A DNA stretch of 64,000 bases from Chrysemys picta bellii. Its lineage: Eukaryota. Shown one piece after another: positions 39,191 through 42,702 of the stretch (position 1 is its first letter; each line of letters starts with the position of its first letter). Made by a program: the position numbers and the translations under genes. The notes under the pieces were generated by a model. It ran no database searches and was not told the DNA's origin. It saw nothing but the letters and a program-made list of their open reading frames with translations. The stretch covers positions 129,890,001-129,954,000 of the forward strand of contig NC_088793.1 of assembly GCF_011386835.1 (NCBI RefSeq). Reading direction: 5' to 3'.

Positions 39191-39847
39191 ACCACTGCAC
39201 ACCAAAGCCAGATGTTGCTGTGAAACATTTCACACTAGAATGAGGGGGAAAAGGTGAAAGCGTAGCTGGGTATGTGGCAGAGTCAACAAGATGAACAGAG
39301 TATTGCTCATTTGGAAATGTCCTAGGGTCTACGTGGCAGGATAGATTTGTTTAAATTCTCTCATTAGTAATGCCACAAAGACAATTGCTGGCAGTGGGAA
39401 CTTAACCTGGTCCAAAGCTGTAGAATTAGCCAAAACGACGGCAGCAGCAGTGAAAAACTTGTAAGATTTGTACTTGGAATGCAGGGAGAATCAAACTGAC
39501 TCAATAAACAAAATGTATCACGGATTGGAAGGGACTCAGGCTCCTGAGGGGGTTTCCACAGTGGAGGAGCTCGTTTTGCATCAGTTTGTAAATTTAAAAC
39601 GGCCCAGTGTCATTAATGCCTAGAGATTGAACACTTAGCCAGCAAATGCAAAGGCAACTATCAAACGGCATCAAGTCCCTGAGGGCAGACCCCAAAAGAC
39701 CAGAGGCAAAGGAAGAAAGCAGGCGGCTTTTTATCTTGTGGGGGAGGAAGACAGAGGAGGAGGTGCACACTATGTACTGTCTAAAAGGGAAGAAAGTGGG
39801 ATCTTATGAAGTAATGGTAGAGTTAAACAGTCAGTACATATGGAAGT

Positions 39848-40125
39848 CAAGTATCAGGAAGTAGCCGTGTTAGTCTGTATCTACAAAAACAACAAGGAGT
39901 CTGGTGACACCTTAAAGACTAACCGATTTATTTGGGCATAAGCTTTTGTGGGTAAAAACCTCACTTCTTCAGATGTGTAGGGGGAACTGCAGAGGTAGCA
40001 TTGTACCACATCTGTGCCACCCAGATTTTATGCTGCATCTGAAGAAGTGAGGTTTTTACTCACGAAAGCTTATGCCCAAATAAATCTGTTAGTCTTTAAG
40101 GTGCCACCAGACTCCTTGTTGTTTT
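39848..40125. mobile_element. Penelope-like element remnant: two head-to-head termini around a 60-nt spacer
   Basis: Inverted arms 39886-39975 and 40036-40125 match at 86/90 nt and contain a hammerhead-type core. Flanking duplication agtacatatg(g/t)aagt at 39833-39847 and 40126-40140. Confidence 0.8.
40035..40075 (+). ncRNA. Minimal (type I, palindromic stem III) hammerhead ribozyme motif
   Basis: gcat-CTGAAGA-a-gtgag(gttttta)ctcac-GAAA-gc-TT^atgc. Stem I is 4 bp, stem II is 5 bp, and the palindromic AAGCTT replaces stem III. Confidence 0.7.
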
Positions 40126-40436
40126 AGTACATATGTAAGTAGATTTAGGGGCTTCAGCTACTGCAGTCGAATATACATATTAGCAGTGCCAAGCAGGACT
40201 GAGCCCACTAGTGAACGCAGGAGAGACCCTGCAAACCTACACCGGGGAACTCATCCATGTGGTCAGTTCTGTGCTTGTTGCTGTAAAATATAAAAGCCAA
40301 AAGAAAAAGTTCCCAGTTCCAGTGATCTGGGAACCAAGGCCAAATCTGTTAGGCAGATATTAGGGGAAGTCAGTCTCTGGCTGCCAATGAAAGATACAAT
40401 CCTGTGAGAGAGAGAAGAGACCCTGGTTATTTAAAA

Positions 40437-40783
40437 CAGAGGTTTTCAACCTTTTTCTTTCTGAGCCACCCCCCGCTATAAAACTCCACAGCCCACCTGT
40501 GCTACAATAACTGGTTTTCTGCATATAAAAGCCAGAGCCACTGTTGGGGGGTAGCAAATAGGGCAATTGCCCAGAGCCCCACACCACAGGGGCCCTCGCA
40601 AAGCTACATTGCTCAGGCTTCAGCTTCAGCCCAGGTGGTGAGGGTTAGGGTCCCAGACTTCAGCCCCATGCAATGGGGCTTTGGCTTTCTGCCCTGGGCC
40701 GCAGCGAGTCTAATGATGGTCCTGCTTGGTGCCCCGCCCTGAAACCTGCTCATAGCCCCCAGGCCCCTGATTGAGAACCACTG
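40437..40783. mobile_element. hAT (Buster/Charlie-like) MITE
   Basis: TIRs cagaggttttcaa / ttgagaaccactg. Perfect TSD atttaaaa. Confidence 0.9.
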
Positions 40784-42702
40784 ATTTAAAAGACTACATC
40801 CAGGATGCAAATTAAAGGGTGAGTGTAGTCAAGTTGTCATCAAGGGGTTAACTGGTTACTCAGAGTATTATGGGTTGGATCCATGCTCCACTCCTCCCTT
40901 ACTTCCTGTTTGATTACTCTGTTTCCCCCCCCCCCCCTTTTTATGTAGCTAAAGAAAGCAGCAGGTTCTCAGCCTGCCGTACTGTAAGTAAAGTGTTTTT
41001 CTTGTGCACCGAGCAATCTCTTTACAAAAGTCAGCTTTGCTGCTGCCGCTCCTGAGAAACACCCTTTTGCAGACTGTGGCTGTGAGCTCCTTTCAGAGCA
41101 GTGCAGGAGCGTGATGCAACTATCCATCCAGAAATCAGTGAAGCTGACAAGCCCCAAAGGCCTGTCAAATTCAGAATGGGAACAAACTGGAAAACAGAGA
41201 GGGGAAAATGAATATTTGGCAAATCTGTCTATCTCCTGATAAGCTTAGGGGGTTACTTCAAGCCATATCAGGTGCAACATTTTCAGATGAAAATGTGATT
41301 TTTTTTCCCAATTGTTGAGTCCCTTTAACTACAGCGCCTGCAGCATTTTATTGTGTGAGAAAGCTTAACCCCGTGTTACTTGGCTAATGAAAAGCAGTGG
41401 TGAATTGGATTTTTATTTCTTGCTGCTGCTGTCCTAGGAGCTTACATGTCATGATTCAAACAACTGGGCGTGAATTTGCAGCATTATCTTGTTAATAGGA
41501 ATGCAGCCCCTCCGGCAACAGGGTAGAGTCATCGCATGGATTTACTTCCAATAGGTGGGCACAAAGCCGCCTTTCTGCATTCAAAACAAGGAAATGCCTC
41601 ATATACAGAACGGGGGGGGGGGGGTGTGTGTTTTCCAGGCCAAACAGGATGGATCTGCCTATGCTGCCTGGCCCCCAGTGTCAGGTTTAGATGGGATGGA
41701 TTCTGTGCTCAGGGAGGGGCAGCACAGAATACAGCCCAGCGGGGAGGGGAGGGTGGGCAGAGGTAGCATTGTGCCACATCTGTGCCACCCAGATTTTATG
41801 CTGCTGAGGGGATCAATGTGTCTTTTCCCCTTCCCACCCCCAGCTCTAATTTACAGCAGCCTCCTGAGGGCTGCCTAGGGGCTGCTACAGCATGAGACCA
41901 TTGCCAACCCCAACTGTTCAGGAATCGTGCATCAGCCGTCTGGAAAGATAGTTAGATTGCCTTAAAAAGCACTTTAATGGCCCCTGTACACCGCCACCAC
42001 AGTGGCATACGTGGGCAGAGAGGTGAATGGGCCCCTCAGCCATATTTTCCACAGCAGCAGACACAAGGGACTAAGTCAACTGCCCTAATGATGGCTTAAC
42101 TCACCCCCAAACATCTCTTGTATAGGGGGAACTGAGCTGCTGTAGCTCCTCCCCACTTCCTGCAGCCAGTGCACAGGGAGCTGGGAAGGCTACCATAACA
42201 ACCACGGCTGCCAGAACAGCCCCTTGGAGTCACAAGCAACCCTTAGGCTGCTCTAAGTTGCTCTGTGGAGACTGTTCTGGAGCAGACTGGCCCTGGGTCA
42301 GTGGAGCACTGCAGTCCATGGTTACCTTTGCATGTGCCTGAGCTGACCGGAGTGCTACGTGGGGGTAACTTGAGACATGGCCAACTCAGCAGCAACACTG
42401 CGTTGCAGCTGCAGAAGAAATGCAGACTTGCCCACAGAAATGTGGCTTGGCTGACCGGAGTTGTTAAACTAGGGGAGGACTCCTCATTTGACAAGGTTTA
42501 ATCCAATCGTGTGGCAGCTGTGGGTATTCAGTACATCAAGTCCTATTTTCTCAGTATAGTGCCCATAGGAAGCAGTGTGTGTGTGTGTGTGGGCGCGATG
42601 CTGGGGAGTTACATTAGACCTGAGGAAGTGTAAGGTAAAAGCTGTTAGTCTCAGCCTGTACTAATGTGCGAAAATCAAATTGTTTTCACCAAAATGATAA
42701 AA

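What the first reader, a model, noticed from the sequence alone, without database searches (positions are those of the whole stretch)
39833..42134. Twin-primed Penelope-type insertion bridged by a spacer stitched together from nearby host DNA
Seen in sequence: the 39848-40125 insert is flanked by a 15-bp duplication (agtacatatg[g/t]aagt, 14/15). It consists of two inverted copies of one retroelement terminus. Both arms stop within 1 nt of the same position, the 5' edge of the hammerhead motif. The 60-nt spacer (39976-40035) is not element sequence. Its 39989-40036 part matches 41757-41804 at 47/48 nt, and its 39978-39989 part (tagggggaactg) matches 42123-42134 exactly. The two pieces are joined in reversed genomic order across a 1-nt overlap. 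Established: Penelope-like elements use a GIY-YIG endonuclease, often leave inverted termini, and their integration mechanism is poorly resolved. Inference: both 3'-OH ends of a 15-nt staggered cut primed cDNA synthesis. The two cDNAs were then joined by copying DNA 1.7-2.1 kb away, via RT template jumps, Pol theta-type templated insertion, or capture of a small circle of 41757-42134. If general, this would be a distinct integration and repair pathway that shuffles local host sequence.
Basis: partly seen in the sequence, partly recalled or inferred. Interest (0 to 1): 0.75.

Follow-up and report, generated by a model that had tools for sequence, protein, structure and literature searches.

The report
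Penelope head-to-head insertion with borrowed filler
An old, dead turtle retrotransposon insertion is made of two end-pieces facing each other, and the 60-base bridge between them was copied from ordinary DNA about 2 kb away; the layout is the known Penelope pattern, and the locally copied bridge is a small clue to how such insertions are sealed.

Summary
A 278-bp insert (39848-40125) lies between a 15-bp target duplication (14/15). It consists of two inverted copies of one Penelope-like 3' terminus carrying a minimal hammerhead motif, separated by 60 nt. Of that spacer, 48 nt match single-copy DNA 1.77 kb downstream (47/48). Another 12 nt (15/16 when extended) match DNA 2.13 kb downstream on the same strand.

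Contigs from four turtle taxa (0.2-2.7% divergent) show the arms are a huge repeat family and the spacer source is not. In each taxon contigs reach one or both flank-arm junctions, so the insertion is present in all four and is old, not an assembly artefact. No empty site was found.

Other loci in these genomes join the arms at this same point with 0-4 nt between, so the long spacer is an exception.

What is modestly new is a filler templated in cis from about 2 kb away, with 1-3-nt microhomologies. The polymerase and the timing (at integration or later palindrome repair) remain unresolved. This scan noted similar fillers elsewhere in this genome; those notes are unverified.

The parts
39833..39847 (.). 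Left copy of the 15-bp target-site duplication (10 of 15 A/T)
   Evidence: D5 (14/15 against 40126-40140)
39848..39885 (-). 38-nt 3' 'tail' of the element, present only on the left arm. It is the outermost part of the cDNA primed from the + strand 3'-OH at 39847.
   Evidence: alignment. It matches the one-sided 30-40-bp tail of PMC8557442 and PMC3846280 and the two RT start sites of PMC11167929.
39886..39975 (-). Left arm: the element terminus in antisense orientation. Its hammerhead core is damaged (GAAA to AAAA at 39947).
   Evidence: (I1). Summed contig depth is about 1e6 against 20-50 for single-copy contigs.
39976..39989 (+). Filler piece 1: 12 nt identical to 42123-42134 (15/16 with 2 nt of arm overlap)
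   Evidence: D3; (only exact match of 12 nt or more in the window)
39989..40036 (+). Filler piece 2: a 48-nt copy of 41757-41804 (47/48). It overlaps piece 1 by 1 nt and the right arm by 1-3 nt.
   Evidence: D1. The k=31 branch signature in contigs of three taxa shows the copy is real (table 8).
40036..40125 (+). Right arm: the element terminus in sense orientation, without the tail. It carries an intact minimal hammerhead core at 40039-40071 (CTGAAGA, extra A, 5-bp helix II, GAAA, AAGCTT palindrome).
   Evidence: Motif features are as described in PMC4209133. The Rfam hammerhead models give no hit.
40126..40140 (.). Right copy of the target-site duplication
   Evidence: D5
41757..41804 (+). 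Source of filler piece 2: single-copy DNA 1.77 kb downstream, present in all four taxa examined
   Evidence: bin depth 56-146 against about 1e6 on the arms; contigs 5, 15, 16, 23, 24, 32
42119..42134 (+). Probable source of filler piece 1: single-copy DNA 2.13 kb downstream, same strand, 319 nt beyond the other source
   Evidence: (D3)

Best explanation
Shown:
- This is one ancient, non-functional insertion of a very abundant Penelope-like (PLE) 3' terminus.
- It has the family's normal head-to-head architecture: a 15-bp target duplication, two outward-pointing 3' ends, and a 38-nt tail on one side only.
- Its centre holds a 60-nt filler copied from single-copy DNA 1.77 kb (48 nt) and very probably 2.13 kb (12-14 nt) downstream, in direct orientation.

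Inferred:
1. The element's endonuclease cut both strands 15 nt apart.
2. Each 3' overhang primed reverse transcription, one from each of the two known start sites.
3. Both cDNAs ran to the same family-typical 5' boundary.
4. The two like-sense cDNA ends could not pair, so they were bridged by microhomology-primed, low-processivity DNA synthesis.
5. After 5' resection of the right-hand + strand, the exposed - strand served as template. The left cDNA's 3' end annealed by TG at 42119-20 and copied to 42134. It then re-annealed by G at 41757 and copied to 41804.
6. It finally annealed by (TG)C to the 3' end of the right-hand cDNA, which is the tip of that same - strand.
7. A host repair polymerase (Pol theta- or MMBIR-type) is the likeliest copier.
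For: - Structure and single event. The duplication brackets the composite and there are no internal duplications.
- PLE identity: the minimal hammerhead features match PMC4209133, and the tail and inverted layout match PMC3846280 and PMC8557442.
- Both-strand cleavage and extension, and two RT start sites separated by the tail: PMC11167929.
- The filler is not element sequence and not a repeat. It has a unique match in the window. Depth over the source is 56-146 against about 1e6 on the arms.
- Real and old: flank-to-arm contigs exist in taxa H, A and B on the left and H, B and D on the right. Contig breaks at exactly 41803/41775 in H, B and D are what a k=31 graph gives for the shared 31-mer 40006-40036 = 41774-41804.
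- Both sources lie on the same strand and the same side, within ordinary long-range resection distance, with 1-3-nt overlaps at all three joints.
- An L1 analogue exists: two-ended reverse-transcription products joined by end joining, with template switches and templated insertions (PMC11702581).
Against: - No empty site or spacer-less orthologue was recovered, so neither the timing of the filler nor the ancestral state of 41757-41804 is proven.
- A template 1.8-2.1 kb from the break is far beyond the usual tens of bp for Pol theta insertions (my own knowledge, not tested here).
- The 12-nt piece rests on a short match.
- In taxon A a contig crosses 41775-41803 unbroken. The spacer copy there may differ or be missing.
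- Nothing in the sequence identifies the polymerase or shows resection.
Confidence: 0.5

Rival explanations
1. Later repair of a palindrome. The insertion was first an ordinary spacer-less head-to-head palindrome. A later break at its centre (hairpin or cruciform cleavage) was then repaired with a templated insertion copied from nearby DNA.
For: -: dozens of contigs per genome join 39970-39976 directly to 40034 with 0-4 nt between. Spacer-less junctions at this exact point are therefore the common form.
- The insert folds as a 90-bp-stem hairpin (-101 kcal/mol, z = -18.8).
- Long palindromes are known to be unstable and to be revised at the centre (my own knowledge).
- Scan notes report templated-insertion scars unrelated to Penelope in this genome (unverified).
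Against: - It needs two events.
- Centre breaks usually delete some arm sequence, yet both arms keep the family-typical end to within 1 nt.
- Spacer-to-source divergence (1/48) is not lower than arm-to-arm divergence (4/90) in any significant way.
Confidence: 0.2
2. Template jumping by the element's own reverse transcriptase. After reaching the RNA 5' end, the PLE enzyme jumped onto local nascent RNA or single-stranded DNA fragments from 42.1 kb and then 41.8 kb, and finally onto the other cDNA.
For: - Template jumps were proposed for Penelope to explain captured sequences (PMC3846280).
- L1 shows template switches of the second reverse-transcription product (PMC11702581).
- Overlaps of 1-3 nt fit end-to-end jumping.
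- Both pieces have the same polarity, as expected from one transcript.
Against: - End-to-end jumping needs acceptor 3' ends, so it implies templates of only 12-16 and 48 nt.
- The region is intergenic and no transcript is known here.
- The reversed order needs an extra jump.
Confidence: 0.18
3. Capture of a small circle or rearranged fragment. A roughly 378-bp circular DNA or RNA spanning 41757-42134 was copied or ligated across its closure point, which gives the reversed order in one continuous tract.
For: The two pieces abut in the order 42134|41757 with a 1-nt overlap, as a circle junction would. The size is in the microDNA range (my own knowledge).
Against: - Only 60 nt of a 378-nt circle are present.
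- No direct repeat flanks the putative circle ends beyond 1 nt.
- No splice signals are present that would suggest a back-spliced RNA (read directly).
Confidence: 0.07
4. Not a real templated event: an assembly artefact, a spacer that belongs to the repeat family, two independent nested insertions, or chance similarity.
For: The 12-nt match alone is short. Two other weak matches to the spacer exist in the window.
Against: - 47/48 has E about 1e-18 in the window.
- Independent short-read contigs from four taxa support the flank-arm joints, and three show the duplicate 31-mer.
- The spacer bin lacks repeat-level depth.
- The only target duplication brackets the composite.
Confidence: 0.03

Closest known systems
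[quoted passage not shown] 2013, PMC3846280; Craig et al. 2021, PMC8557442)
   Same: Head-to-head inverted copies of the terminal repeat; a short target duplication around the whole unit; a 30-40-bp tail at one end only (38 nt here); a hammerhead motif in the repeat; a junction at a palindromic point (ATGCAT).
   Different: Only about 90-128 nt of the terminus is present and there is no ORF. The centre holds a 60-nt filler instead of a direct or overlapping palindromic junction.
Host or unrelated DNA captured between Penelope pLTRs inside target duplications in Adineta vaga (PMC3846280)
   Same: Non-element DNA lies between terminal repeats and the whole unit is flanked by one target duplication.
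   Different: The rotifer captures are 0.9-1.5-kb spacers or whole genes, mobilised in trans between direct repeats, and no nearby origin is reported. Here the filler is 60 nt, in two pieces, demonstrably copied from about 2 kb away in cis, and sits between inverted arms.
In-vitro both-strand cleavage and extension by the Anolis Poseidon PLE protein (PMC11167929)
   Same: It predicts cDNA primed from both strands and two start sites separated by the tail. Both are seen at this locus.
   Different: The in-vitro work does not address how the two products are joined. This locus is a natural end product of that unknown step.
L1 twin priming and complex two-ended L1 insertions (Ostertag and Kazazian 2001; PMC11702581)
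   Same: Both ends of the staggered break are extended by reverse transcription. A discrete 12-18-bp target duplication is retained. The inversion junction is resolved by end joining or microhomology, sometimes with template switches or templated insertions.
   Different: In L1 the second primer anneals inside the same RNA, so the inverted part is a more 5' segment. Here both arms are the same 3' terminus starting at defined start sites.
Templated insertions of break repair: Pol theta-mediated end joining and MMBIR/FoSTeS (my own knowledge; reviews PMC12426944, PMC11724301)
   Same: Short tracts copied from nearby DNA, several rounds of copying, and 1-3-nt microhomology at each switch.
   Different: The template distance (1.8-2.1 kb) and the 48-nt tract exceed typical Pol theta events. 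The broken ends here are cDNAs, not chromosomal ends.

Membership tests
Penelope-like element (terminal fragment / non-autonomous copy) | Minimal type-I hammerhead motif in the terminal repeat: CUGANGA, an extra nt before helix II, a G10.1-C11.1 pair, GAAA, and a palindromic helix III/loop | tested here: met
   Read directly. The right arm at 40035-40075 has GCAT / CTGAAGA / A / GTGAG-loop-CTCAC / GAAA / AAGCTT palindrome / ATGC. These are the features listed in PMC4209133. The Rfam hammerhead models give no hit, as expected for a motif without a stable helix III.
Penelope-like element (terminal fragment / non-autonomous copy) | Adjacent inverted 5'-truncated copy (head-to-head) | tested here: met
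   I1; (86/90 identical arms, 3' ends pointing outward)
Penelope-like element (terminal fragment / non-autonomous copy) | Optional 30-40-bp tail at one end only, equal to the interval between the two RT start sites | tested here: met
   38 nt (39848-39885) on the left arm only; PMC8557442, PMC3846280, PMC11167929
Penelope-like element (terminal fragment / non-autonomous copy) | Short target-site duplication around the whole unit | tested here: met
   15 bp, 14/15 (D5). Published examples are 8-10 bp (PMC3846280).
Penelope-like element (terminal fragment / non-autonomous copy) | An autonomous partner with RT and GIY-YIG endonuclease sharing this terminus | not testable with these tools
   There is no ORF in the 278-bp insert and no other copy in the window. 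The turtle genome cannot be searched here.
L1-type twin priming | The second primer anneals internally on the same RNA, so the inverted segment is a different, more 5' part of the element | tested here: not met
   Both arms are the same 90-nt terminal segment.
Pol theta-type templated insertion | Microhomology at every template switch | tested here: met
   TG, G and (TG)C at the three joints
Pol theta-type templated insertion | Template within tens of bp of the break; tracts mostly under about 30 nt | tested here: not met
   Templates lie 1.77 and 2.13 kb away and one tract is 48 nt. The typical range is from my own knowledge.
Capture of a small circular DNA/RNA | A filler continuous across a single closure point, with short direct repeats or splice signals at the circle ends | tested here: inconclusive
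   Continuity across 42134|41757 is met. Only 1 nt is shared and no GT/AG signals are present.

The most novel reading that the evidence does not exclude
Two-ended Penelope integration intermediates are regularly sealed by microhomology-guided copying of resected flanking DNA up to a few kb away. If so, these elements, with more than 1e5 termini per turtle genome, would be a systematic source of short cis duplications, including pieces of introns and exons. The size, side and orientation of the fillers would then record the otherwise unknown joining step of Penelope retrotransposition.
Probability: 0.25. Interest if true: 0.65.

Novelty: new variant of a known kind. Interest (0 to 1): 0.4.

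Why it matters
The last steps of Penelope-like retrotransposition are explicitly unresolved in the literature: how two cDNAs primed on opposite strands become one duplex insert (PMC11167929, PMC8557442). This locus is a natural end product in which the joint left a readable trace. That trace is two short tracts copied from one strand of one flank, with 1-3-nt overlaps.

One old locus proves nothing general. Turtle genomes, however, hold hundreds of head-to-head junctions of this family, and this scan has flagged several more with nearby-copied fillers. A census could therefore test a concrete joining model. The insertion itself has no sign of function.

Tried and rejected
- Orthologous empty site: the four runs laid (taxa H, A, B, D) all carry the insertion.
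- Other copies in public metagenomes: a 21-nt core pattern gave no hit. Bacterial, viral, plasmid and E. coli collections were not tried because they are irrelevant.
- Rfam: no hammerhead hit even at E up to 10 on 296 nt. The weak mir-452 and snoRNA hits only reflect the hairpin.
- Spacer as element sequence: rejected. Other family copies continue upstream of 40034 with a different sequence (loose-end consensus ending TTTCACTCCA), and the spacer bin lacks repeat-level depth.
- Two nested insertions: rejected, because there are no internal target duplications.
- Snap-back of a single cDNA: rejected. The second arm would then copy the tail and an inverted flank, whereas the right arm lacks the tail and is followed by a direct duplication.
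- Arms ending at the ribozyme cut: rejected. The predicted cut is after 40071, 36 nt inside the arm.
- Alternative sources for the first 13 nt of the spacer (26192, 339, 29318): chance-level, and they span the joint between the pieces.

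Full report
**1. What is in the sequence**

The region was read directly and scanned for repeats.

- A 15-bp direct repeat (39833-39847 / 40126-40140, 14/15) brackets a 278-bp insert. The chance of 14/15 or better at one fixed register is 4e-8.
- The insert has two arms that are reverse complements of each other (39886-39975 and 40036-40125). They are identical at 86 of 90 positions, with 60 nt between them.
- Read in element sense, both arms start with CATCTGAAGAAG and run to ...CCTTGTTGTTTT. Both 3' ends therefore point outward, towards the duplicated target.
- The left arm continues for 38 more nucleotides (39848-39885). The right arm does not.
- The start of that extra piece (TGTAGATA) resembles the start of the target duplication (AGTACATA) at 6 of 8 positions. 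This is why the repeat finder extends the inverted repeat to 40133. It may mean that the right-hand primer was helped by a little base pairing (inference).

**2. What the arms are**

The right arm carries the features that define the minimal hammerhead of Penelope-like elements (PLEs). In order these are:
- a 4-bp helix I (GCAT...ATGC);
- CTGAAGA;
- one extra base;
- a 5-bp helix II closed by G-C next to GAAA;
- an AAGCTT palindrome in place of helix III.

This is the motif described in PMC4209133, which states that such motifs occur in turtles. The left arm has the GAAA mutated to AAAA. Rfam's hammerhead models do not detect the motif. That is expected for a motif without a stable helix III, so the identification rests on direct reading.

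Contigs of four public runs were laid on 39300-42500.
- Summed depth on the arms is about 1e6. Neighbouring single-copy contigs have depth 20-50.
- The arms therefore belong to a very large repeat family in all four taxa.
- The window holds no other copy.

**3. The architecture is the known one**

The literature describes PLE insertions as follows:
- 5'-truncated, often with an inverted 5'-truncated copy abutting head-to-head;
- flanked by one short target duplication;
- carrying a 30-40-bp "tail" at only one end (PMC8557442; PMC3846280).

In vitro, the Anolis Poseidon PLE protein cleaves and extends both DNA strands. Reverse transcription starts at two internal sites, and the interval between them is the tail (PMC11167929). 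This locus shows all of these features. Both-strand priming is thus well supported here, but it is not new.

It also differs from L1 twin priming, where the second primer anneals inside the same RNA. Here the two arms are the same terminal segment.

**4. The shared inner end**

The arms end at the centre of an ATGCAT palindrome, inside the 5' strand of helix I. That is 36 nt upstream of the predicted ribozyme cut (after 40071; compare PMC11167929, where the cut lies 26 nt after the start of stem II). The end is therefore not a ribozyme-made end.

One search shows that the boundary is recurrent.
- In every run, several contigs from other genomic loci join 39970-39976 directly to 40034 with 0-4 letters between. 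For 39973 to 40034, the perfect palindrome, there were 7, 2, 8 and 2 contigs in the four runs.
- In taxon B the listed junction classes add up to a depth of several thousand, against about 40 for a single copy.
- Some junction variants have depths of tens of copies, so part of this may be amplification of already inverted units.
- Non-inverted copies continue upstream of 40034 with a different sequence (loose-end consensus ending TTTCACTCCA).

Two conclusions follow. The coincidence of the two arm ends is a property of the family: a preferred cDNA end, or pairing at the palindrome. The usual head-to-head junction has almost no spacer. Arkhipova et al. already noted that palindromes at inverted junctions are the rule. 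What defines this boundary remains unexplained.

**5. The spacer**

- Positions 39989-40036 equal 41757-41804 at 47/48. This is the only such match in the window (E about 1e-18).
- The source is not repetitive. Its depth bin is 56-146, about what two copies plus overlapping contigs give.
- The remaining 13-14 nt contain a 12-nt exact match to 42123-42134, or 15/16 including the last two bases of the arm.
- That is the only exact match of 12 nt or more anywhere in the 64 kb. It lies on the same strand, 319 nt beyond the first source.
- A chance match this good within 2.5 kb is expected about 0.001-0.002 times (arithmetic). The empirical rate in this window is 0.6%.
- Two weaker matches elsewhere (26192, 339) span the joint between the pieces and are at chance level.
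- I take the 48-nt assignment as certain and the 12-nt one as probable (about 0.8).
- The joints share 2 nt (TG), 1 nt (G) and 1-3 nt ((TG)C).

**6. Real and old**

Logan contigs are built with k=31. The two copies share exactly 31 identical bases (40006-40036 = 41774-41804). That must split the graph so that one contig ends at 41803 and the next starts at 41775.

- This is exactly what is seen in taxa H, B and D (records 15/16, 23/24 and 32). Those genomes therefore hold the spacer copy with the same boundaries, including the A/G difference at 40005/41773.
- In taxon A a contig crosses the site unbroken. This could be a single-base difference in its spacer copy, a simplification of the graph, or absence. 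It is left open.
- Contigs run from unique left flank into the left arm in H, A and B (to 39875-39877), and from the right arm into the right flank in H, B and D (from 40084-40103).
- Judged from mismatches in the listed contigs, the taxa differ from the window by about 0.2, 0.3, 2 and 2.7%.
- The insertion predates their divergence. This agrees with 4/90 differences between the arms and 1/48 between spacer and source.
- An assembly artefact is excluded. No empty site was found.

**7. Rejected readings**

- Two nested insertions: there are no internal target duplications.
- Spacer as element sequence: wrong depth, and the family's upstream sequence is different.
- Snap-back of one cDNA: the second arm would copy the tail and an inverted flank.
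- Direction of copying: a composite made from two separate places is more simply the copy than the origin. This still lacks an outgroup test.

**8. Mechanism (inference)**

The staggered cut leaves two 15-nt 3' overhangs, and each is extended by reverse transcription. The two cDNAs have the same sense and cannot pair except at palindromes.

I propose that 5' resection of the + strand on the right-hand end exposed its - strand for at least 2 kb. The steps would then be:
1. The 3' end of the left cDNA annealed there by TG and copied 42121-42134.
2. It dissociated, re-annealed by G and copied 41757-41804.
3. It dissociated again and annealed by (TG)C to the tip of that same - strand, which is the right-hand cDNA.
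4. Ordinary fill-in then completed the duplex.

This accounts for the direct orientation, the single side, the kb range, the distal-then-proximal order and the short overlaps.

The tract lengths and overlaps suit a low-processivity host repair polymerase, although the distance is large for Pol theta. Template jumping by the PLE enzyme, capture of a small circle, and later repair of a spacer-less palindrome give the same product and are listed as rivals. L1 offers a documented analogue of two-ended products joined with template switches and templated insertions (PMC11702581).

**9. Novelty**

- Host or unrelated DNA between PLE terminal repeats inside target duplications is published (PMC3846280). 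Those cases are long spacers or genes with no stated nearby origin.
- I found no paper describing short fillers at PLE inversion junctions copied from DNA a few kb away. Searches cover only the library held here, so this is a limited search.
- Other readers of this scan have noted the same thing elsewhere in this genome: a 22-nt loop from 575 bp away, 27 nt from 3.5 kb, 33 bp, 139 bp from the same intron, 208 bp from 1 kb, and 451 bp of a downstream exon.
- Those are unverified notes that I could not check. They are leads for a census, not support.

**10. Verdict**

Timing and enzyme are unresolved, and there is no sign of function. Interest is 0.4.

Tools that failed or were closed are listed under Tried and rejected.

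Noticed in passing
window 40370-40800: A second interspersed repeat. Summed contig depth is 17,000-107,000 in all four taxa, against 20-50 for single-copy sequence. Many contigs carry small indels at 40479, 40736 and 40853. The family was not identified.
   Followed up: no
window 40925-40947 and 41602-41624: A C13 run and a G13 run form a 23-nt inverted repeat (83%) that brackets 654 nt of single-copy DNA (I2-I9). Contigs of all runs break at these homopolymers. The origin is unknown. It lies between the insertion and the filler sources.
   Followed up: no
window 41692-41738: An 18-nt-stem hairpin (89%, 11-nt loop) lies 19 nt upstream of the 48-nt filler source (I5). It could be a pause site for a polymerase, or a coincidence.
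   Followed up: no
window 39970-40040, seen in contigs of other genomic loci: Hundreds of copy-equivalents per genome join the two orientations of this terminus at the same ATGCAT point with 0-4 nt between. Some identical junction variants (for example with GGT or CT between) reach depths of tens of copies. This suggests that already-inverted units were themselves amplified (tables 5 and 5c).
   Followed up: partly
window 41652-42172, taxon A (run X1): One contig crosses 41775-41803 without the k=31 break seen in the other three taxa. Taxon A differs from the window by only about 0.3% and has the left flank-arm joint. Its spacer copy may carry a difference or be absent.
   Followed up: no
window 39952-40059: The palindrome gives weak microRNA-precursor-like Rfam scores (mir-452, 23 bits against a gathering score of 70). 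This is a by-product of the hairpin and not evidence of a microRNA.
   Followed up: yes
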